Source: Fonticula alba ATCC 38817
Taxonomy: Eukaryota; Protista; Nucleariida
Direction: 5' to 3' (one strand)
DNA length: 64,000 nt
Assembly (NCBI GenBank): GCA_000388065.2
Contig: KB932207.1
Under the pieces are notes generated by a model, which was given only the letters and a program-made list of their open reading frames with translations, did not search any database and was not told the origin of the DNA. The position numbers and the translations under genes were made by a program. Positions 8,542 to 50,060 of this stretch are shown here, one piece after another. Each line of letters opens with the position of its first letter. Within the stretch, counting starts at the first letter, position 1.

Positions 8542-9208
8542 AATGTGACACACGGCCTTGCCCATATCGACGCCTCGCACACGGGAACATGGTGATGAAG
8601 CACAAAACTAAAATATATTACACAACTGGCACATTTGGTCATGGAATCTGCATCACCATGCAGTGAGAAGCTCAAGGACAACAAACGACAGGGATCGTTT
8701 CAAGGAGGGGAAGGGGAAGGGGGAACCGGGGGGAGGGAGAGGGAGGGATGGGGAGGGAGAGGGAGATGGAGAGGGAGAGGGAGGGATGGGGAGGGAGGAG
8801 GGGAGAACTAGAACAAAAAGGAGGAGGTCCAGGCGCACGCGCGCCGACGGGGATTTAGCCAACGCATGTTGCCCGTATCTGTCTCTTCTCCCGTGCGCCA
8901 GCGCGGAGAGGCAGGGCAGGGGAGAAGAGTAAATGAGAGGAGAGCAGCCATGTCCCCCCTCCTGAAGCCCCTCTCTCGGTGGTGGCCATTACCCCGCCTG
9001 GGTCTTGATGCTGGCGGGCACAACAGCACACCACAAGCATCCGGTCATAGCCTCGGACTGTGCGACGTCCCAGGGAGAGAGAGAGAGAGAGAGAGGGAGG
9101 GAGGGAGGGAGGGAGAGAGAAAGGGAGGGAGGGAGAGCGGGGGTGCTGGAGCCACGGAGAAGGAAACAATGAAAAAGTAACGGCAACTAGCGGGCAGCTT
9201 TTCTGACA

Positions 9209-11547
9209 TTAGAACCGGGGGCGTTTCTCCATGGGCTTGGTGGCAGCCGGCAGCACAGAGGGAACCTTGCCCAGCAGGGCGCTGATCGGCGCCCGGCCCT
9301 GGATCATGAGCATCATGTCCCGCTCGAAGTTCTTCTTCAGGTTGAGATACCGCATGCCGATGGCGATGTAGGACCCGCGCATGGCAAAGAGGCCACTGCT
9401 CTGGCCCAGGGACACCACCTGGGCAATGGGCTTCCCCGGGGAGGCGGCGGTGCCCTTGGTGCCGATGACCAGCGGGGCGCGGCCCTTCTCAATCCGGCAG
9501 ATGTTCCGCGCGATGGAGACGCCATGTGAGGCCGCGGCAAAGGCCAACTTCTCCACCTTGAGATTGGCCACATCGCCACCGGTGAAGATGTGATCAAAGC
9601 CAAACACCTGCAGGGTGGGCCGCGTCCGAATGAAGCCCGTGGTGTCCAGGAGGTTGCTGAAGTGGGCCTTGAGGAAGCGAGTCTGCGGGACTTGACCCGT
9701 GGCAAGGTAGAACTTGTCACACTCGATGATGCGCCCGGTGTCGGTCTCCATGCGCCGACCGGTGGTGTCCAGGTTGACCACCCGCTCGCCGAGGATGAGC
9801 TCCACCCCGAGGGACTCCAGGTAGGGAGCCACCAAACGGTGGGCCTTCTTGGGAAGACGCCGAAGGAGGAAGGGGCTGCTGCTGACCAGCATAATGTGCT
9901 TGGTGGGGAAGCGCTCGGCAAATTCGGCGGCCAGCTCCACGCCCACCGACCCACCACCGATGATGAGCACCGAGCGGGACTGCTCCAGCGACCGGAAATC
10001 CGCATTCAGCTTCTTCGTCCGGTAGGAGGTGGTGACATTGTTGCCGCGGATCTGCGAATTGTAGGTGGCCCCGGTGGCAATGACCAAATAGTCATAGGGG
10101 ATGGACTGGCCATCGGCGCGGACCTGGCGGTGGCACACCTCCGTGGCATACCCGATGACCACCCGGCCGTTGCGCACGTAGGAGGTATGCAAAAACCGAT
10201 GGTTCTCCACCAGCGAGGGGTTGGCCATGACCGTGGTGATGGATGGGGTCAGCTCGAAGTACTCCTTCGTGTCGACCAGGGTCACATGGAAGCGAGGCAT
10301 GGCATCCAGCAGCCGGGCACAGAAGGCCCCGAGGATGCCGCCGCCGACAATCACGACCCTCCGGGCATTGGGGGGAACAACTGAGCTGTGTGTGCGAGTG
10401 TGCGAGTGTGCGAGTGTGCGAGTGTGCGTGTGTAGAGGGCAAGACAAAAGTTAGGATCAGTTGCAGGAGGGGGCCCGGGGAGGCCCCCGGGGGAGGAGGG
10501 GGGGGGGGGGGGGGGGGGGTAAACCCGAGGGAAGAGAGGGCAGGAAGCAGGAGGGGATGGCCCCGTCACGCACAGGGTCGGGGCGATGTTCACGCGCGAC
10601 AGGGCATGCTTGAACTTGGGCAGGATGTTGGTCTCAATCAGGGAGCGAACTTCGCGCGCGGCCGGGTCGAACAGCGTGATCGGCTGGTTCTTGGGCATGG
10701 CCTTGATGATCTCCGGGGTGAGGGCCGTGGCGGCTTCGATGATGCGCTCGCGCGTCCGGTGCTCGATGTTCAGGGCCAGGGGCGACTCGCTGCGAATGTA
10801 GTCATTGAGGATCTCCTGGACAAGGCGCCACTCGGGGAAGCGCTTGAGCAGGGCCAACTCCTCCAGGAAGAAGACATTCTCCTCGGCGAACTCGGTGCCG
10901 GCGAAAACCCGCAGAGCAGTACGCAGGTCCGACCGGCCGAGGACATCATCCAGCGAGAGGGAGTCCGACCGGGACTCGGCCAGCGACCGGGGAAGGGACC
11001 CGGTGTCGGTGATTCCCGCCAGGCCCGGGGCGCCGCCACTGGTGGGCGAGGGCGGCACCGAGGAGAAGTGCGCGGCCGCCCGGCGGTGGGAGCGCTGGCG
11101 CGAGGGCTCCGAATCGGACGACGAGTCGAAGCTCAGCTTGCGGTAGGCCCGATCCAAGGCCAGCATGGAGGTGGACTCGGCCCGGAGGGTCGGCTCGCCG
11201 CCATTGGGCCGGGTGGCGAAGGTGGGCGACCCGGGCGGGGTGGCCACGGTCGTCGAGCAAAGCCCGCCCTCCGGGTGGTCGGAGTAGGAGGAGGAATCCT
11301 CCTCGCCATCGAGGAGCCCACTGTCCCCGGGGTCGGCGCCAATGGCCCAGAGCTCCTCCAGGGCGCCGGTCGTGGCGGCCGACGAGGCGCAGTCCTGAGT
11401 GGAGGAGGTGTCTGGGGTGGTCTCGCCAGAGAGTGGCTGAGTGTACTCGCTGTCGGAGTCGGAGTCGGAGGCATTGGCGACGGCGTTGTTGCGCCGGTTG
11501 GCCACCCGGTTGCGGATGGTGCCCAGCAGCATGGGGGCACTGAGCAT
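9209..11547 (-). CDS. RGS-domain plus FSP1/AIFM2(AMID)-like FAD/NAD(P)H oxidoreductase fusion protein; 5' end uncertain (may extend towards the 12037-12296 gap)
   Basis: RGS motifs at about 10610-10965 (LDDVLGRSDLRTALRVFAGTEFAEENVFFLEE, LALNIEHRTRERI, LFDPAAREVRSLIETNILPKF). The intron 10573->10386 (CT|GTGCGT...CACAG|C) joins in frame as IAPTL-SVVPPNARRVVIVGGG. The oxidoreductase has VVIVGGGILG, LVIATG, VLIIGGGSVGVELAAE and IFTGGDVA; stop at 9209. Confidence 0.8.
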
Positions 11548-12036
11548 GGGAAGATGGGGGGGGGGAGAGAGAGAGAGAGAGAGGGAGGGAGGGAGGGGGA
11601 GCATGTGAGAAGGGAAGAGGGGCAGGGGGAGGGGGGGGGGGGCAAGGGAGGAAGGGGAAAGAGTGGAGGGACGCACCGGTAAACAGTCAGCGACCGAGAC
11701 TCCGGCTGTGTAGGGGGCGGGAGAGGGAGGGGGGTAGGGGGAAGGGAGGGAAAAGGACGGAGCGTCGGCGCGACTGTCGGGCGCAGAGGCGGGGGATTGG
11801 GGGGGGGGGAGAGGACAGGGAAATAGAATGAGAGAAGGGTGCCTCTGCAGCACCAGGCCGAGGTTTGGCGGGGTGCTGCCTTTCAAAGGGGAGGCGAGGC
11901 GCTGGAGCGGATTCCTACGATGCAGAGGGGCAGGGAGGGGACGGGTGTATAGGCACCTCCGGGCACGCCCTGGCCTGGAGCCCGTTCGAAGACGCAAGAA
12001 CAGTACACATGTAGCCAACGGGGCGGCCCCCCCCCC

Positions 12037-12296
12037 NNNNNNNNNNNNNNNNNNNNNNNNNNNNNNNNNNNNNNNNNNNNNNNNNNNNNNNNNNNNNNNN
12101 NNNNNNNNNNNNNNNNNNNNNNNNNNNNNNNNNNNNNNNNNNNNNNNNNNNNNNNNNNNNNNNNNNNNNNNNNNNNNNNNNNNNNNNNNNNNNNNNNNNN
12201 NNNNNNNNNNNNNNNNNNNNNNNNNNNNNNNNNNNNNNNNNNNNNNNNNNNNNNNNNNNNNNNNNNNNNNNNNNNNNNNNNNNNNNNNNNNNNNNN
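12037..12296. other. Assembly gap (N run); further gaps at 14399-14440, 20151-20160, about 22841-22925, 32633-32642 and 49113-49122
   Basis: Runs of n; those at 12037, 20151 and 22841 are flanked by poly-G/C tracts. Confidence 0.98.
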
Positions 12297-14277: not shown

Positions 14278-14560
14278 TCCATGCGCGGACACACGCACGG
14301 AAACGTACACACAAGCCCTGCAGCGACCACGCTCGTGACTGGGCCACACAAGGGGGGCCCGGTACTCCGCACTTGCCACTTCGTGCGCGGTGCGCACANN
14401 NNNNNNNNNNNNNNNNNNNNNNNNNNNNNNNNNNNNNNNNTCCATGCGCGGACACACGCACGGAAACGTACACACAAGCCCTGCAGCGACCCCGCTCGTG
14501 ACTGGGCCACACAAGGGGGGCCCGGTACTCCGCACTTGCCACTTCGTGCGCGGTGCGCAC
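14278..14560. repeat. 120-bp duplication flanking the N gap (14278-14397 vs 14441-14560), likely overlapping contig ends
   Basis: The same sequence (one mismatch, gaccAcg vs gaccCcg) lies on both sides of the 14399-14440 gap. Confidence 0.8.
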
Positions 14561-20022: not shown

Positions 20023-21090
20023 ATGCTCAAGCAATCGTTCCAGGTACCCCAGCCTGCGTGTGCACCCTCTCCCTTTACTTACCTCGCCTTCCCCACTCCA
20101 GTCTGACTTCTGCCTTCCTGCGCCTCCTGCGCCCTCTGCCCCCCCCCCCCNNNNNNNNNNCCCCCCCCCCCCGCCCATGTGACTCACACTTCCGAGCAGC
20201 TCGCATCCTCTTCAGCTCTGGCGCACCGAGACCCATGAGTCGGCCAGTGTTAAGCTCACGCAGGATGCCTTGATTCGATCTCGCGTGCTGGAGATCCTCA
20301 CTCCGGAGGGGTGCCCCTCGGCCGCCCTGGTGACCACTTCCATTTCCTGTCCCCCGGGGCCAGGCCAGTCGATTGGCATTCGTTTGCGTACGTCTCCCCC
20401 TCCTCCTCTTGCCCTTGATTTGGTTCAGGCGGTCCATTGCCAATCCGCTCCTCTCTCTCTCTCTCTCTCGGTCTCTTCCTCCTAGCCATCTCGGCCATAC
20501 TAACGCCCTTACGAGGGACACATCGCCAGCCTTTCTCACCATCCAGGTGAAAAATCTCAACCGCTATTTCTCCTTCGAAGTCGAGGTGGAGGATGATCAA
20601 GGCGTTGTGCGCCGGTTCCGGTGTTCCAACTTCAACGTGCGCCTCTCGGATGCCTCCTCATCAGACTGGATTTCAATTCTCCCTCTGTTGGCTCTGACCT
20701 GTGGCGCTATCCCCCCTCCCCCCCCCCCTCCTCGCCCAGACAACCACCCGCGTAAAGGAGTATATTTGCACCATGCCCCTGCTCCTGGACGCCGGGTGGA
20801 ATATCGTCAAGATCGATCTGGCCCAAATGGTTCGGTGCGTGCCGCCCAAGATGGGCTCCCCAAGCACAGATGCGGGGGATTTCCCAGCTGCTCACCCACT
20901 CTGTTCCGTCTTTGTCCATGTGTTCCGCATCCATAGCAAGGTGTACGGCACCCAGTTCACCGAGGTCCGCTCGATCACCATCCATCCCAACTGCCTCCTT
21001 CGGAGAATCTTCTTCAGCGACAAGAACATCCCGGAGGAGGACCTGCCGGCTGATTTCCGCTTGCACGCGGCCAGCGACACGGCCAATTGA
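20023..21090 (+). CDS. CFAP20: CFAP20/BUG22 homolog, multi-exon; one small N-terminal segment unresolved near the 10-N gap at 20151-20160
   Basis: Exons encode MLKQSFQ | SHPLQLW...IRSRVLEI...SISCPPGPGQSIGIRL | PFLTIQVKNLNRYFSFEVEVEDDQGVVRRFRCSNFN | TTTRVKEYICTMPLLLDAGWNIVKIDL | KVYGTQFTEVRSITIHPNCLLRRIFFSDKNIPEEDLPADF. This is collinear with the CFAP20 consensus. A TACTAAC branch site precedes the acceptor at 20529. Confidence 0.9.
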
Positions 21091-21313: not shown

Positions 21314-24300
21314 TTACTGCGACTGGGGGAGGATGTTATCCAGGATGTCGGTTGTCCGGGCGAGAAGCTGCGCCGAGGTTGGCCGCATCGATGGGTCGTG
21401 TTCCTGACACCAGCGCTGAAGCACCTGCATTTTGCCCACGGCAGGGTTTTCCGGGTCAAAGACAACCGGTGTATCTCCGTCGAAGCTCGGCCGCTCGCCC
21501 TTTCGGACCTGTTCCATGATAGCGCTGACGGTCATGCCTGATCGTGGCAAACGGCGACACCGGCGTGTGGGCGTACACATGCGCGAGAGGATGCATACAT
21601 GGATACATGCATGTGTGAGTCCGTGTGGGGGGCAATACGTGGGTGAGCGAGTTTTTTCCGCCCAAACAGGGCAAGGAAGAACACCCCAGAAAAAGTGACG
21701 GACCTGGCCAGGGAAGTTTGCGCGTGAGGACCTTCCAAATGAGCACCGACATGGCATAGATGTCACTGGTCTTTCGGTGTTCGACCGCCGGCTGGGCGCG
21801 TTTCATGACAGCCGTGAGAAGCTAGACACAAGTGGCCATGTGTGCAATCGCAGAAGGGCAAGAAACAGACTAAATGTGAGAAGGGCATGGAGCCAGGGCG
21901 AAGGCAGAGAAGTAATCATGAATCGTAGGTCGTGGCATGTGCGCGCGCGCGTGTGTGTGTATGTATGTATGTATGTATGTGTGTGTGTGTGTGTGTGTAG
22001 AGTCCCACAAAGACAGGCACAGTGTGGCCACCGTGTGGCCGGGCCGAGAAAGACCCTTCGAAGACGCACCTCCGGACTGGCATAGATGATCGAGAAGGCA
22101 TTGAAATCGGAGATCTCCATCTGGATATGTGACTGCCGATCGGCATTGATCGACTGAGCCACACCGAAGTCACCGATTGCGGCCATCCAAATGCCAGTGT
22201 GGGTATTCATCTCGATGAAGATGTTCCTCGACTTGATGTCCTGGTGGACAATGCCAACACTGTGAATGTGCTCGAGGCCGTTGGCTGCGCGCAGGCGGGA
22301 GGCCCAGTTGTGCCGGGTTCATCACACACAAGCACCGGGTCAATACCGAGAGGCACGGAGCACGAGATGCTCGTCTGGCGAAGATCCCACTCCCAGCTAG
22401 ACAGGCACAGGGGATTTTGCGCACCGATGTCCCTCAAGACCGAGAGGGAGGACTGGAGGGTGAACTCGATCGTCGACTCGAGCAGGACATCGAGAGACAT
22501 GTTGAAGCACTTCATGCCGATGGCCGGCGGATTTTCGGAGTAGAAGTACATCGGCACGATGTTCGGCGTCTTGGACAGAGACCTGTCATCCAGCGCGGGA
22601 GGGACCCCCCAAACGGGCGTGCATTTGTGTGTCTGTGAGAAGGGAGGAGGCGTTTTCAAGGAGGGGGAGGGGGGGGGGGCTGCGAGGGGCAAGGGCAAGC
22701 AAGCTCAGCGCAACAATGCCACGCGACGTACCACATGATGGACACCTCACGGTAGAAGAGACGCAAGGTGAGATCGCTCATCTCTGCAGGGTGACATTCG
22801 GCGTCCAGCCAAGCGCGGAAGGGGGGGAGGGGGGGGGGGGNNNNNNNNNNNNNNNNNNNNNNNNNNNNNNNNNNNNNNNNNNNNNNNNNNNNNNNNNNNN
22901 NNNNNNNNNNNNNNNNNNNNNNNNNGGGGGGGGGGGGGCATATTTTCCTTGTCTCAGTCGGACGCGAGCGAGGTCCAAGGAAGGACAGGGGGAGGGAGGG
23001 TGGAGGAAGGCCACCTTAACTTCATGGGACGTACGAGTCATCTCCTTAACCGCGACCATATCGGTGCCAATGCGTCTCCGCAGTGTCGGATCGATGATCT
23101 GGGTGCGGAATACCCGGGCCTGGCTCCCACAGCCCAGACCGGTGGTATTACCCAGGTCGACGCTATTTTCGAGAGCGACATTGATGAAGCCCGGCAGGGA
23201 GAATTCTGTCCAAGCATCGGGGAGCCCACCACCATTGGTCAGGAACAGAGGGCGGGGAAGGGAAAAGCGCGACGAAGAGGCGGATGGCTTGCAAGAAGGG
23301 ACTTCAGCATACCGACAAGGGTGTTGAGCACGGTCATGTTTTCATCATCTCCCGGGGACATGCTCTGGCCAGTGGGATCCTTGCTGGGCGAACGCCGCCG
23401 GCAGAAGAACACCATCAGCAGGACGATCAAAGCAAGGAGCACAACAATCGGCACGGCAATCACGGTTGCTGCGGCAGGGTCGGGACAGGGCCGGGGAAGG
23501 GTGGGTGGGGCGGGGAGGCGAAGGAAGGGAAGAGAGGGGAGCGGATCAACGGGAGGTGGTCAGAGGGGAAGATAGATGAAGAGGGCGGGGGGGGGGGGGG
23601 GGGCCGAAAGGGGGCCCAGGCATTCCCCCGACCGAAAAGAAAAAAACAACAAAAAAGGTCCACCCAGCTCTTGCCCCCCACCCCCCCCACAACTGAGAAC
23701 ATACCAAGCACTCCGGACGACATGCGAGGTCTCGGGTTTGACCAAACAAGGCAATCCTGCTTGGCCGGGCCCAGGCAGCTGGAACAGCCATCCACACAGG
23801 CGGCGCAGTGGGTCTCCGTGGCCGGGTATGTTCCCGCCGGGCAGCCACCCTCCACACACAGGCCTTCGTACGCCATGTAGCCGAAGTGGCACTCGACACA
23901 GTGGCCGGCTGGGGCTTCGCAGGAAATACACCATTGCGGGCATGCGCGGCACTCCCCGGCACCTGTGCCGCCGGGCTTTTCGGCCGGCACCAGGTAGTAA
24001 CCCGTGGCGGGGCAGGCCTCCCGACACTCATGGAGCTGGGGAATGAAAAACTTGTCGGCCCTGCAGGCCGTGCACTTGAGGCTGGTGTCCTGGCACTCGA
24101 GGCACCGGGAATCACAGCCCCGGCATCGGCCAGTGGCATCTGGATGCGAGATGGGATCCGGGTTGAAGTGACCTGCCGGGCAGTCCACCGCGCAAGTCCC
24201 ATCCCCCCGAAGGACCAATTGCCCGGAGCACAACTCGCACCGGACATTGACCTCGGAGCATTTGTGCTCGGATGGCTGAACATCGTGGACGCAGCGATCG

Positions 24301-32575: not shown

Positions 32576-32699
32576 ACCGAAGTGCCACGGGCGCCGGGAC
32601 CGAAGTGCCACGGGCGCCGGGACCGAAGTGCCNNNNNNNNNNACCGAAGTGCCACGGGCGCCGGGACCGAAGTGCCACGGGCGCCGGGACCGAAGTGCC
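32576..32699. repeat. 23-bp minisatellite (ACCGAAGTGCCACGGGCGCCGGG)n interrupted by a gap, just upstream of tRNA-Gly
   Basis: About 2.5 perfect units on each side of the N run at 32633-32642; true copy number unknown. Confidence 0.85.
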
Positions 32700-49100: not shown

Positions 49101-50060
49101 AGCAGTTGGAGCNNNNNNNNNNAGGTGGCCGGCGGTGCAGGCGGAGCAATTGGCGGAGGAGGTGCAGGAGGTGCAATTGGCCGAGCAGTTGGAGCAGGTG
49201 CCATTGGAGGGAAAGGTCCCGCCGGGGCAGGGGGCGACGCAGGCCCCGGCGTGGAGGAAGTGCCCGGCGGTGCAGGCCGTGCAGAGGGTGGCCGAGGTGC
49301 AGGAGGCGCAGTTGGCCGAGCACGCGAGGCAGGAGCCGCCGACGGCGACGAAGCCGGCCGGGCAGGCGGACAGACACTGGCCGCTGTGATGGAAATGGCC
49401 CTGGGAGCAGCTGCTACAGAGGGAGGGGGAGCTGCAGTGGGTGCACTCCTCTGGGCACGAGTAGCAGGCGTTGTAATCCAGGTAGAAGCCCTCCTCGCAG
49501 GAGGAGCAGCCGGATTGGGTGCACATTTGGCAGTTGATCGGGCAGAAGGCCTCGCAACTGCGATCGACCATCAGCGAGTAGGGCTGGAGGCATTCAAGGC
49601 AATCCCGCCGGCTGGGGTCGTATATCTGGCAGCCGGGGGCACAGAGGATGTCCGCTTGGTGGCTGGCATCCGGAAGGGCCTGGGCGATGGGGCAGAGCTT
49701 CCGGGCGGCGGTGCAGAAGACCCGGTCGCCGAAGGCAAAGGCCGCGCCCTCCGGGCAGGCCAGGCAGCCATACTCGTCGCAGGGGCCGAGGCAGGATTCC
49801 GGGCAGGCCGGCGACTGGGTGTGGGCCTGGGCCTGGGCATCCCACCGGAAGGGCAGGCCGTAGCGCAGGGCGGCGACCATGCGCTGGTCGCCGCCGGCGG
49901 CCTCGAGTGCCGCCGCCGCCGCCGAGTCGAGCACGGGCAGCGCCTGGCGGCGGGTCGGCAGCGAGTGGACCACTCGCAGCAGCAACGCGAGGCTGAGCAG
50001 GCCGGCGAGCAGCACTCCGGCGGGCCGGAGCGGCAGTGGCAGCCGGGCCGTGCGTGTCAT
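45058..50060 (-). CDS. Type I receptor kinase 2: signal peptide, about 17 furin-like Cys repeats, TM, TKL-type RD kinase; the apparent frame change coincides with the gap at 49113-49122
   Basis: Signal GVLLAGLLSLALLLRVVHS, CxxC-rich ectodomain, TM VAIGVGVGVTVLLLLLLAAALVLF. Kinase exons encode VGAGAQARIL, LVLKML, FRNELSIIW, HRDIKSQN, FTDFG, FFAAPE, ADVYSLASVAW and MWHSDPAQRP. Intron positions match kinase 1. Confidence 0.88.
46151..46209. repeat. (TGTGCA)n hexamer microsatellite in an intron of kinase 2
   Basis: About 10 units read directly. Confidence 0.85.

What the first reader, a model, noticed from the sequence alone, without database searches (positions are those of the whole stretch)
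9209..11547. RGS domain spliced in frame to an FSP1/AIFM2-like NAD(P)H oxidoreductase
Seen: a complete RGS domain and a two-Rossmann-fold AMID/FSP1-type oxidoreductase are joined by a 188-nt GTGCGT..CACAG intron that keeps frame (IAPTL-SVVPPNARRVVIVGGG). The RGS exon has no stop before the donor, and the oxidoreductase has no plausible start codon of its own. Known: RGS domains bind or deactivate G-alpha subunits; FSP1/AMID enzymes reduce quinones with NAD(P)H. Inference: a single protein may couple heterotrimeric G-protein signalling to membrane redox or ferroptosis-like protection. I do not know this architecture from model organisms.
Basis: partly seen in the sequence, partly recalled or inferred. 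Interest (0 to 1): 0.8.

Follow-up and report, generated by a model that had tools for sequence, protein, structure and literature searches.

The report
RGS box fused to FSP1-like reductase
This is a real, spliced gene of the amoeba Fonticula alba whose single protein joins a G-protein "off-switch" (RGS) domain to an FSP1-type flavin quinone reductase; the gene is already in public databases, belongs to an old and widespread family, and nobody has tested what that family does.

Summary
The real start is the in-frame ATG at 11532. The spliced product has 711 aa and is identical to GenBank H696_04656 of Fonticula alba, which UniRef calls 'RGS domain-containing protein'.

It has three parts:
- a disordered N-terminus of about 185 aa;
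- an RGS box that keeps the residues matching RGS4 E87, N88 and N128;
- after a linker of about 6 aa, a complete FSP1/AIFM2-like FAD/NAD(P)H reductase. FSP1 is the best solved match by sequence (E 1e-29) and by fold (TM 0.85), and the residues matching FSP1 E156, D285 and K355 are kept.

The architecture is not unique. F. alba has three paralogues, and this scan already reported the other two on other DNA. It also occurs in Parvularia, more than 35 Mucoromycota, Piptocephalis, Cafeteria, a cercozoan MAG and environmental contigs. All RGS-bearing copies fall on one side of a well-supported branch of the reductase tree.

I found no paper on it. The most likely mechanism, which is inferred, is that the RGS box docks the reductase on GTP-bound G-alpha at the membrane. 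Interest is moderate: the family is catalogued but uncharacterised.

The parts
11677..11793 (-). Exon 1, 5' UTR. It reaches at least 11793 and holds no ATG.
   Evidence: Contig pieces in X1 (11677-11793) and X2 (11677-11725) are joined to 11539. ATG check.
11540..11676 (-). Intron 1, 137 nt, GTGCGT...CTCAG.
   Evidence: The joint 11539|11677 is present in both runs. Intron ends printed.
10574..11539 (-). Exon 2. The CDS starts at the ATG at 11530-11532. It encodes residues 1-319 and two bases of Leu320.
   Evidence: The translation equals P0001.
10978..11532 (-). Disordered N-terminal region rich in Ser, Thr, Ala and Pro (residues 1 to about 185). It has no MG myristoylation motif.
   Evidence: AF2 pLDDT is below 50 over residues 1-55 and 65-169. 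Composition.
10582..10962 (-). RGS box (residues about 191-317).
   Evidence: Pfam PF00615. Hits to PDB RGS16, RGS2 and RGS8. Family HMM envelope 191-317. AF2 helical bundle with pLDDT above 90.
10386..10573 (-). Intron 2, 188 nt, phase 2 inside Leu320. It holds a 22-nt C run (10498-10519) and four copies of CACACTCG (10395-10426).
   Evidence: The joint 10385|10574 is present in X1 and X2. Sequence.
9147..10385 (-). Exon 3: residues 320-711, the TAA stop at 9209-9211, and a 3' UTR of about 62 nt.
9245..10375 (-). FSP1/AIFM2-like FAD/NAD(P)H oxidoreductase (residues 324-700): FAD Rossmann fold, NAD(P)H Rossmann fold and C-terminal domain.
   Evidence: Pfam PF07992 and PF00070. PDB FSP1 at E 1e-29. 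Foldseek FSP1 TM 0.85-0.86. Conserved residues.

Best explanation
Shown: window 9147-11793 (minus strand) is Fonticula alba gene H696_04656. It has three exons and one mRNA, and it encodes a 711-aa protein. The protein consists of a disordered N-terminus, an RGS box, a linker of about 6 residues, and a complete FSP1/AIFM2-type flavin reductase with its C-terminal domain. It is one of three F. alba paralogues. It belongs to an old family in which the RGS box always sits directly in front of the reductase. Inferred mechanism: the protein is an effector-type RGS protein. The RGS box binds GTP-bound G-alpha, which is lipid-anchored at the membrane, and probably speeds its GTP hydrolysis. This binding places or regulates an NAD(P)H:quinone reductase at sites of active G-protein signalling. 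In the Holomycota copies the RGS box thereby takes over the membrane-targeting job that the N-myristoyl group does for animal FSP1. The reduced quinone would then act in the membrane as an antioxidant or electron carrier. My confidence is about 0.97 for the gene and protein structure, about 0.9 for family membership, and about 0.4 for the mechanism.
For: Gene structure: spliced contigs from two samples, and the spliced model is identical to P0001. Domains. AF2 gives pLDDT above 90 for both domains and pTM 0.77 although about 180 residues are disordered. Fold: human FSP1 is the top match at TM 0.85-0.86, ahead of NDH-2 at 0.76. Catalytic equipment: both GxGxxG motifs are invariant, and E470, D591 and K670 sit in the alignment columns of echinoderm FSP1-like E158/E154, D287/D282 and K357/K353, which correspond to human E156, D285 and K355 (residue roles from PMC10516921). 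RGS interface: E218, N219 and N255 match RGS4 E87, N88 and N128 (numbering from memory). Of the 45 RGS-bearing family members aligned, 36, 34 and 34 keep them. Single origin, RGS side: phmmer with the F. alba RGS box alone against 1.84 billion representatives returns RGS-reductase fusions as hits 1, 2, 5 and 10 after the self-hit, plus a cercozoan one lower down. Single origin, reductase side: in the reductase tree all 46 RGS-bearing rows lie on one side of a branch with 96-97% SH-aLRT. The gap between the two domain envelopes is short, 2-9 residues in all but two members (P0040, 25 residues; the paralogue P0122, about 480). Membrane link: the F. alba protein starts MLLG, so it has no myristoylation motif. 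Only the two SAR members, Cafeteria and the Cercozoa MAG, start with MG. FSP1 needs its myristoyl anchor and its C-terminal domain for membrane function (PMC10516921).
Against: There is no biochemical or genetic data for any family member. I found no paper on the architecture. RGS4 D163, S164 and R167 are not conserved: they are N302, I303 and K306 here, and mostly K, L/V/I (in roughly equal numbers) and E/D in the family. G-alpha binding or GAP activity could therefore be weak, selective or lost. I did not verify that F. alba has a G-alpha gene; only an unchecked first-stage note says so. Two polyA RNA-seq runs offered under the same species label gave no reads on the gene, so expression evidence rests on one study.
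Confidence: 0.55

Rival explanations
1. Redox-sensing GAP. The flavin domain works mainly as a sensor of NAD(P)H/NAD(P)+ or quinone state. Its redox-dependent conformation or dimerisation switches the GAP activity of the RGS box, so that metabolic state feeds back on G-alpha/cAMP signalling.
For: The linker is short and of nearly constant length, and pTM is 0.77; both suggest a fixed arrangement of the domains that could transmit conformational change. FSP1 and AIF relatives dimerise through their C-terminal domain or on nucleotide binding (PMC10516921). The paralogue H696_03620 has Gln at the position of the conserved flavin-site Glu, as if catalysis were dispensable in some copies.
Against: The full catalytic equipment, including the quinone-pocket C-terminal domain and its Lys, is conserved across the family. 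That would be more than a nucleotide sensor needs. There is no direct evidence.
Confidence: 0.2
2. The RGS box is a non-GAP scaffold. As in Axin, AKAP10 or the SNX-RGS proteins (from my own knowledge), it binds something other than G-alpha, or it regulates the reductase within the molecule. The protein would then be simply a regulated FSP1-like reductase with no link to heterotrimeric G proteins.
For: The alpha7-alpha8 contact residues of RGS4 (D163, S164, R167) are replaced. The Pfam RGS score is modest at 44 bits. de Mendoza et al. note that some RGS domains have lost GAP activity (PMC3971589).
Against: The residues that contact the G-alpha switch regions, matching RGS4 E87, N88 and N128, are kept in 34-36 of the 45 aligned members across lineages as distant as Fonticula, Mucorales and Cafeteria. 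The closest solved relatives are the R4-type GAP-active proteins RGS16, RGS2 and RGS8.
Confidence: 0.2
3. There is no fusion. Two neighbouring genes, an RGS gene that ends in the 'intron' and a separate reductase gene, were wrongly joined by the reader, by the annotation, or by a chimeric assembly.
For: The RGS frame stays open through the intron to a stop at 10351-10353, so an unspliced RGS-only product is formally possible. One 38-nt contig piece lies inside the intron, on its microsatellite.
Against: Contigs from two samples carry the exact GT..AG junction in frame. The reductase exon has no start codon of its own. More than 45 homologues share the architecture. An environmental relative has an intron at the same junction, in the same phase and also in a Leu codon.
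Confidence: 0.02

Closest known systems
FSP1 / AIFM2 (animal ferroptosis suppressor protein 1), e.g. PDB 8yo8, 8wik, 8jsc, 7xpi
   Same: It is the best solved match by sequence (E 1e-29, against 1e-9 for AIFM1) and by fold (TM 0.85-0.86 over the whole FSP1 chain). Both have two Rossmann domains plus the FSP1-type C-terminal domain. The residues matching E156, D285 and K355 are conserved.
   Different: Identity is only 22-25%. In the tree it forms a separate clade from the echinoderm FSP1-like proteins, so it is a paralogous subfamily and not an orthologue. It has no N-terminal myristoylation motif; instead it carries about 320 residues, including an RGS box, in front of the reductase.
F. alba paralogues H696_03620 (1120/1121 aa) and H696_05598 (1042 aa), and the Parvularia atlantis homologue (601 aa)
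   Same: They have the same RGS-then-reductase order and are the nearest relatives of both domains. The three F. alba copies form one clade with 99-100% SH-aLRT.
   Different: The paralogues are longer. H696_03620 has about 600 residues before its RGS box. H696_05598 has about 480 residues between the RGS envelope and the reductase envelope. H696_03620 has Gln at the conserved Glu. An earlier scan note says one paralogue has both domains in one exon (not checked here), whereas this copy has an intron at the junction.
Mucoromycota and Zoopagomycota 'RGS domain-containing protein' / 'FAD/NAD(P)-binding domain-containing protein' (Rhizopus, Mucor, Phycomyces, Apophysomyces, Cunninghamella, Jimgerdemannia, Piptocephalis and others)
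   Same: Collinear architecture, a short linker, and 33-39% identity over the full length. They are the sister group of the nucleariid clade in the reductase tree.
   Different: They have almost no N-terminal extension. Many carry a long low-complexity C-terminal tail with a conserved NLSGSD-like motif. Their RGS motif reads AHENLLF where this protein has AEENVFF.
Effector-type RGS proteins: RGS-RhoGEFs (p115-RhoGEF, EhRGS-RhoGEF 4gou), GRK2, Dictyostelium RGS-kinase
   Same: An RGS or RGS-like box is fused to a catalytic domain that G-alpha-GTP recruits or regulates. This is the working model proposed here (from my own knowledge). An RGS-kinase (P0149) and EhRGS-RhoGEF also appear among the weaker RGS hits.
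   Different: The partner domain here is a flavin quinone reductase. Neither the domain-architecture survey I read (PMC3971589) nor any other paper I found mentions such a partner.
Type II NADH dehydrogenase (NDH-2 / Ndi1)
   Same: The same two-Rossmann quinone-reductase fold, TM 0.61-0.77.
   Different: The match is weaker than to FSP1 in both sequence (7e-9) and fold. The NDH-2 C-terminal membrane domain PF22366, which the NDH-2-like hits carry, is not detected here.

Membership tests
RGS domain (Pfam PF00615) | Sequence match above the curated threshold | tested here: met
   44.2 bits against a cut-off of 23.9, E 2.9e-11, covering profile positions 1-109 of 117. phmmer hits to RGS16, RGS2, RGS8, RGS5 and RGS1 chains.
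RGS domain (Pfam PF00615) | All-helical bundle fold | tested here: inconclusive
   AF2 predicts helices from 194 to 313 with pLDDT above 90. No separate fold search of the RGS part was run, because the reductase dominated the whole-model search.
RGS domain (Pfam PF00615) | G-alpha switch-contact residues (RGS4 E87, N88, N128; numbering from memory) | tested here: met
   They are E218, N219 and N255 in this protein. Of the 45 aligned family members, 36, 34 and 34 keep them; four of the 45 have a gap at E218 and N219.
RGS domain (Pfam PF00615) | alpha7-alpha8 contact residues (RGS4 D163, S164, R167) | tested here: not met
   They are N302, I303 and K306 here. The family majority at the first and third positions is K and E/D; the second is L, V or I in similar numbers.
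RGS domain (Pfam PF00615) | GAP activity on a G-alpha subunit | not testable with these tools
   This needs single-turnover GTPase assays with a cognate G-alpha.
FSP1/AIFM2-type NAD(P)H:quinone oxidoreductase | FAD and NAD(P)H Rossmann domains, each with a GxGxxG motif | tested here: met
   PF07992 at E 1.3e-35 and PF00070 at E 5e-14. G334/G336/G339 and G463/G465/G468 are invariant in the 34-sequence alignment.
FSP1/AIFM2-type NAD(P)H:quinone oxidoreductase | FSP1 is the nearest solved relative, including the FSP1-specific C-terminal domain | tested here: met
   E 1e-29 over FSP1 residues 8-349. Foldseek TM 0.85-0.86 with 374-381 aligned columns on targets of 363-367 residues.
FSP1/AIFM2-type NAD(P)H:quinone oxidoreductase | Flavin-site residues (human E156, D285, K355) | tested here: met
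   E470, D591 and K670 lie in the same alignment columns as E158/E154, D287/D282 and K357/K353 of two echinoderm FSP1-like proteins. Residue roles are from PMC10516921.
FSP1/AIFM2-type NAD(P)H:quinone oxidoreductase | N-terminal myristoylation motif (MG...) for membrane targeting | tested here: not met
   The protein starts MLLG and the reductase is internal. Among RGS-bearing members only Cafeteria and the Cercozoa MAG start with MG.
FSP1/AIFM2-type NAD(P)H:quinone oxidoreductase | Orthology with animal FSP1 | tested here: not met
   The FSP1-like echinoderm sequences fall on the other side of the 96-97% branch, together with plant AIF-homologue-B-like proteins. This protein is a related subfamily, not an orthologue.
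FSP1/AIFM2-type NAD(P)H:quinone oxidoreductase | NAD(P)H-dependent reduction of ubiquinone | not testable with these tools
   This needs an enzyme assay.
RGS-reductase fusion family (uncharacterised; Holomycota plus some SAR) | RGS box directly N-terminal to the reductase, with both domains nearest to those of other members | tested here: met
   RGS-only search. Reductase tree. Domain envelopes.
Type II NADH dehydrogenase (NDH-2) | NDH-2 C-terminal membrane-anchor domain (PF22366), with NDH-2 as the nearest relative | tested here: not met
   PF22366 is not among the Pfam hits. NDH-2 ranks below FSP1 in sequence and in fold.

The most novel reading that the evidence does not exclude
The RGS-FSP1-like family is a G-alpha-gated membrane quinone reductase. 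Active heterotrimeric G-protein signalling would directly switch on local ubiquinol production, giving lipid-peroxidation or ferroptosis-like protection or plasma-membrane electron transport, while the same protein shuts the G protein off. This wiring would date back to before the split of fungi and nucleariids and be shared with some stramenopiles and cercozoans.
Probability: 0.25. Interest if true: 0.75.

Novelty: new variant of a known kind. Interest (0 to 1): 0.45.

Why it matters
If the inferred coupling is real, it would be a direct physical link between heterotrimeric G-protein signalling and membrane quinone redox chemistry, a type of RGS effector that has not been described. It would also show a second way to bring an FSP1-type enzyme to the membrane, by protein docking instead of a myristoyl anchor. 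The family is conserved in Mucorales, including the genera that cause mucormycosis (Rhizopus, Mucor, Apophysomyces, Cunninghamella). In those fungi G-protein/cAMP signalling controls morphology, and genetic tools exist, so the idea can be tested. As a discovery it is limited. The protein and its domain labels are already in public databases, the architecture has well over a hundred catalogued members, and this scan has already reported the two sister genes.

Tried and rejected
1. Two polyA RNA-seq runs of 2026 offered under the 'same species label' (X12, X17) gave no usable reads. Their only alignments were on a G/C homopolymer.
2. A word-indexed search with the RGS box alone found only the protein itself. 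The exhaustive phmmer search was needed to find its relatives.
The eighth was the search for FSP1 structure papers. The two G-protein evolution and review papers I read do not mention it.
4. The AF2 coordinates are not exposed to scripts. I therefore could not measure the interface between the domains or the accessibility of the G-alpha face.
5. I considered intron retention producing an RGS-only isoform. The only intronic signal is a 38-nt piece on a microsatellite. The apparent depth in the intron bins is otherwise explained by the parts of those bins that overlap exons.
6. I considered NDH-2, AIFM1 and sulfide:quinone reductase as the home family. All match less well than FSP1.
7. The 14-17 RGS-less rows inside the fusion clade are mostly short or fragmentary models. 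I could not decide whether any is a true secondary loss.
Full report
**What is in the sequence.** On the minus strand of 9209-11547, Pfam finds an RGS domain in the upstream open frame (PF00615, 44.2 bits, cut-off 23.9). In the downstream frame it finds Pyr_redox_2 (E 1.3e-35) and Pyr_redox. The two frames are separated by 188 nt (10386-10573) that begin GTGCGT and end CACAG. Removing them joins ...IAPTL to SVVPPNARRVVIVGGG through a Leu codon split CT|C. The RGS frame has no stop before the donor. The reductase frame has no ATG ahead of its first GxGxxG motif. The window has 58-75% G+C and several N gaps.

**Transcript evidence.** Four small runs of 2012 from one study hold 86-90% of the sampled words of the stretch. 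I laid two of them, from different samples, on 8700-12030. Each gives one contig (2368 and 2310 nt) covering three blocks: 9147-10385, 10574-11539 and 11677-11793/11725. Each contig therefore skips 10386-10573 (188 nt) and 11540-11676 (137 nt). Both skipped stretches have CT..AC ends on the plus strand, which is GT..AG on the gene's strand. The predicted splice is thus real.

It removes the ATG at 11547. The first ATG of the mRNA is the in-frame one at 11532, and exon 1 holds no ATG. The only intronic signal is a 38-nt piece on the (CACACTCG)4 microsatellite. The rest of the depth in the intron bins comes from the exon bases those bins contain. Two polyA runs of 2026 offered under the same species label gave nothing useful.

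**Identity.** The spliced CDS (11532-10574 plus 10385-9209) translates to 711 aa with a single terminal stop. It is letter for letter P0001, which is GenBank 'hypothetical protein H696_04656 [Fonticula alba]' and UniRef 'RGS domain-containing protein'.

**Anatomy of the protein.** AF2, run with a 121-sequence alignment, gives mean pLDDT 79 and pTM 0.77.
- Residues 1 to about 180 are disordered. They are rich in Ser, Thr, Ala and Pro, and there is no MG motif.
- Residues 194-313 form a helical bundle with pLDDT above 90.
- There is a short dip in confidence at the linker.
- Residues 328-700 form a confident two-Rossmann fold with a C-terminal beta-hairpin and helix.

**The reductase domain.**
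- By sequence, FSP1 chains are the nearest solved structures (E 1e-29 for human 8jsc/8wik, 2e-26 for chicken 7xpi). AIFM1 follows at about 1e-9 and NDH-2 at 7e-9.
- By fold, human FSP1 leads with TM 0.85-0.86 over its whole length. NDH-2 (0.76), sulfide:quinone reductases and Ndi1 follow.
- E470, D591 and K670 lie in the alignment columns of the Glu, Asp and Lys of echinoderm FSP1-like proteins, which correspond to human E156, D285 and K355.
- The FSP1 structure paper places the Glu and the C-terminal-domain Lys at the isoalloxazine ring. It also shows that the C-terminal domain and the N-myristoyl anchor are needed for activity and membrane function (PMC10516921).

**The RGS box.** Its best solved relatives are the R4-type proteins RGS16, RGS2 and RGS8. 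E218, N219 and N255 line up with RGS4 E87, N88 and N128 (numbering from memory). Of the 45 RGS-bearing family members aligned, 36, 34 and 34 keep them. The alpha7-alpha8 contacts D163, S164 and R167 are not kept.

**The architecture is a family, not a one-off.** The 391-aa reductase part finds, directly after the self-hit, proteins of 515-719 aa whose precomputed Pfam lists hold both PF00615 and PF07992. They come from Rhizopus, Mucor, Parasitella, Phycomyces, Apophysomyces, Cunninghamella, Umbelopsis, Jimgerdemannia, Piptocephalis and many more, plus metagenomic proteins. A family-specific RGS HMM also detects the box in several proteins that Pfam had missed. The gap between the end of the RGS envelope and the start of the reductase envelope is 2-9 residues in all but two members.

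An unbiased test used the F. alba RGS box alone against 1.84 billion representatives. The top hits after the self-hit, with their ranks among the non-self hits, were:
- rank 1, H696_03620 (1120 aa, E 1e-27);
- rank 2, H696_05598 (1042 aa);
- rank 5, a Parvularia atlantis protein (601 aa);
- rank 10, the metagenomic P0002;
- lower in the list, a 'Cercozoa sp. M6MM' MAG protein.

All of these carry Pyr_redox_2 behind the RGS box. A profile search added Cafeteria roenbergensis (621 aa, RGS plus Pyr_redox_2, N-terminus MGC...). The ESM Atlas holds a 59-member Mucoromycota cluster in which 98% of members carry RGS and 100% carry Pyr_redox_2.

**Phylogeny of the reductase domain.** In quick maximum-likelihood trees (124-125 rows, LG+G4), all 45-46 RGS-bearing rows lie on one side of a branch with 96-97% SH-aLRT. 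With them are 14-17 rows without a detectable RGS box, mostly short or fragmentary models. All plant AIF-homologue-B-like, amoebozoan, archaeal and animal FSP1-like rows lie on the other side.
- Inside the fusion clade, the three F. alba paralogues form one group (99-100%).
- That group is next to Parvularia and an environmental sequence.
- Together with a few metagenomic sequences, these are sister to Piptocephalis plus Mucoromycota (97%).
- Cafeteria, the cercozoan MAG and some environmental rows form the other, more distant subgroup, on long branches.

Taken with the RGS-only search, this fits one origin of the fusion, at least as old as the split of fungi and nucleariids. It was then either older still or transferred to or from SAR lineages. 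The tree is unrooted and was built with the quick method, so the order of events is not established.

**An intron at the seam.** On an environmental contig (L001), a prokaryote-style gene caller had split a relative into a 155-aa RGS ORF and a 444-aa reductase ORF 17 nt apart. The sequence shows a 55-nt GTACGC...CTGAC...TTAG intron. Removing it gives an in-frame 587-aa fusion. That intron is phase 2 inside a Leu codon and lies within one codon of the F. alba position. The seam intron is therefore probably older than F. alba. An earlier scan note says one F. alba paralogue has both domains in a single exon (not checked here).

**Mechanism.** Nothing about function has been shown. Here is what the anatomy argues for.
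- Both halves look competent. The flavin, NAD(P)H and quinone-pocket elements are kept, and so are the switch-contact residues of the RGS box.
- The seam is short and of nearly constant length.
- The Holomycota members lack the myristoyl anchor that FSP1 needs.
- The two SAR members that keep an MG start still carry the RGS box.

The reading I favour, at about 0.4, is an effector-type RGS protein of the kind seen in RGS-RhoGEFs, GRK2 and the Dictyostelium RGS-kinase (from my own knowledge). G-alpha-GTP at the membrane would dock the RGS box, which brings or activates the quinone reductase there, and the box in turn shortens the G-alpha signal. The rivals are these:
- a redox or NAD(P)H sensor that gates GAP activity (0.2), for which the Gln-for-Glu change in paralogue H696_03620 is a hint;
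- an RGS box that no longer talks to G-alpha (0.2), supported by the lost alpha7-alpha8 contacts;
- a false fusion (0.02).

That F. alba has G-alpha genes rests only on an unchecked first-stage note.

**Novelty.** The gene model, its protein and the 'RGS domain-containing protein' label are public. The family has well over a hundred catalogued members. This scan has already followed up the two paralogues on other pieces of the genome with the same conclusion. I found no paper that describes or tests the architecture. I therefore rate it a new variant of a known kind: a multidomain RGS protein, or equally an FSP1-type reductase, with an undescribed partner. It is catalogued but uncharacterised and of moderate interest.

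This follow-up adds six things:
- the corrected 5' end and the UTR intron;
- the shared seam intron;
- the RGS-only reciprocal search;
- the Cafeteria member with a dual-acylation-like N-terminus;
- the residue-level conservation in both domains;
- the tree.

Noticed in passing
window 11540-11676 (minus strand): This is a 137-nt intron in the 5' UTR with the same GTGCGT donor as the coding intron. It contains an in-frame ATG (11545-11547) that looks like a start codon in the genomic sequence but is spliced out.
   Followed up: yes
window 10395-10426 and 10498-10519 (minus strand, inside intron 2): The intron holds four tandem copies of CACACTCG and a 22-nt C run. A separate 38-nt contig in run X1 lies on the microsatellite and probably comes from similar repeats elsewhere.
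   Followed up: partly
window 12037-12296, with smaller gaps at 14399-14440, 20151-20160, 22841-22925, 32633-32642 and 49113-49122: These are assembly gaps (runs of N). The 260-nt gap lies about 240 nt upstream of the known 5' end of the gene, so the promoter region is incomplete.
   Followed up: no
P0121 / P0169 (F. alba H696_03620, not in this window): This paralogue has Gln (GVQLAAE) at the position of the otherwise nearly invariant Glu that corresponds to FSP1 E156. It also has about 600 residues ahead of its RGS box. It is possibly a catalytically altered copy.
   Followed up: partly
L001:3517-5335: On an environmental eukaryotic contig (ENA, 13.6 kb), the RGS and reductase ORFs were called as two genes. 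They are one gene interrupted by a 55-nt intron at the same seam, in phase 2 and in a Leu codon. A kinase gene lies upstream on the opposite strand.
   Followed up: yes
P0188 (Cafeteria roenbergensis) and P0155 (Cercozoa sp. M6MM MAG): These RGS-reductase fusions lie outside Holomycota. Both start with MG (Cafeteria with MGC, a myristoylation/palmitoylation-like start), unlike all the Holomycota members examined.
   Followed up: partly
Alignment A1, columns about 860-870 (Mucorales C-terminal tails): Many Mucorales members carry a long low-complexity C-terminal tail with a conserved NLSGSD(V/I) motif that F. alba lacks. Its function is unknown.
   Followed up: no
window 8700-12030, runs X12 and X17: Two large polyA RNA-seq runs of 2026 listed under the 'same species label' (coded organism B, not A) gave no reads on this gene apart from homopolymer matches. 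Either the label covers another organism or the gene is silent in those samples.
   Followed up: no
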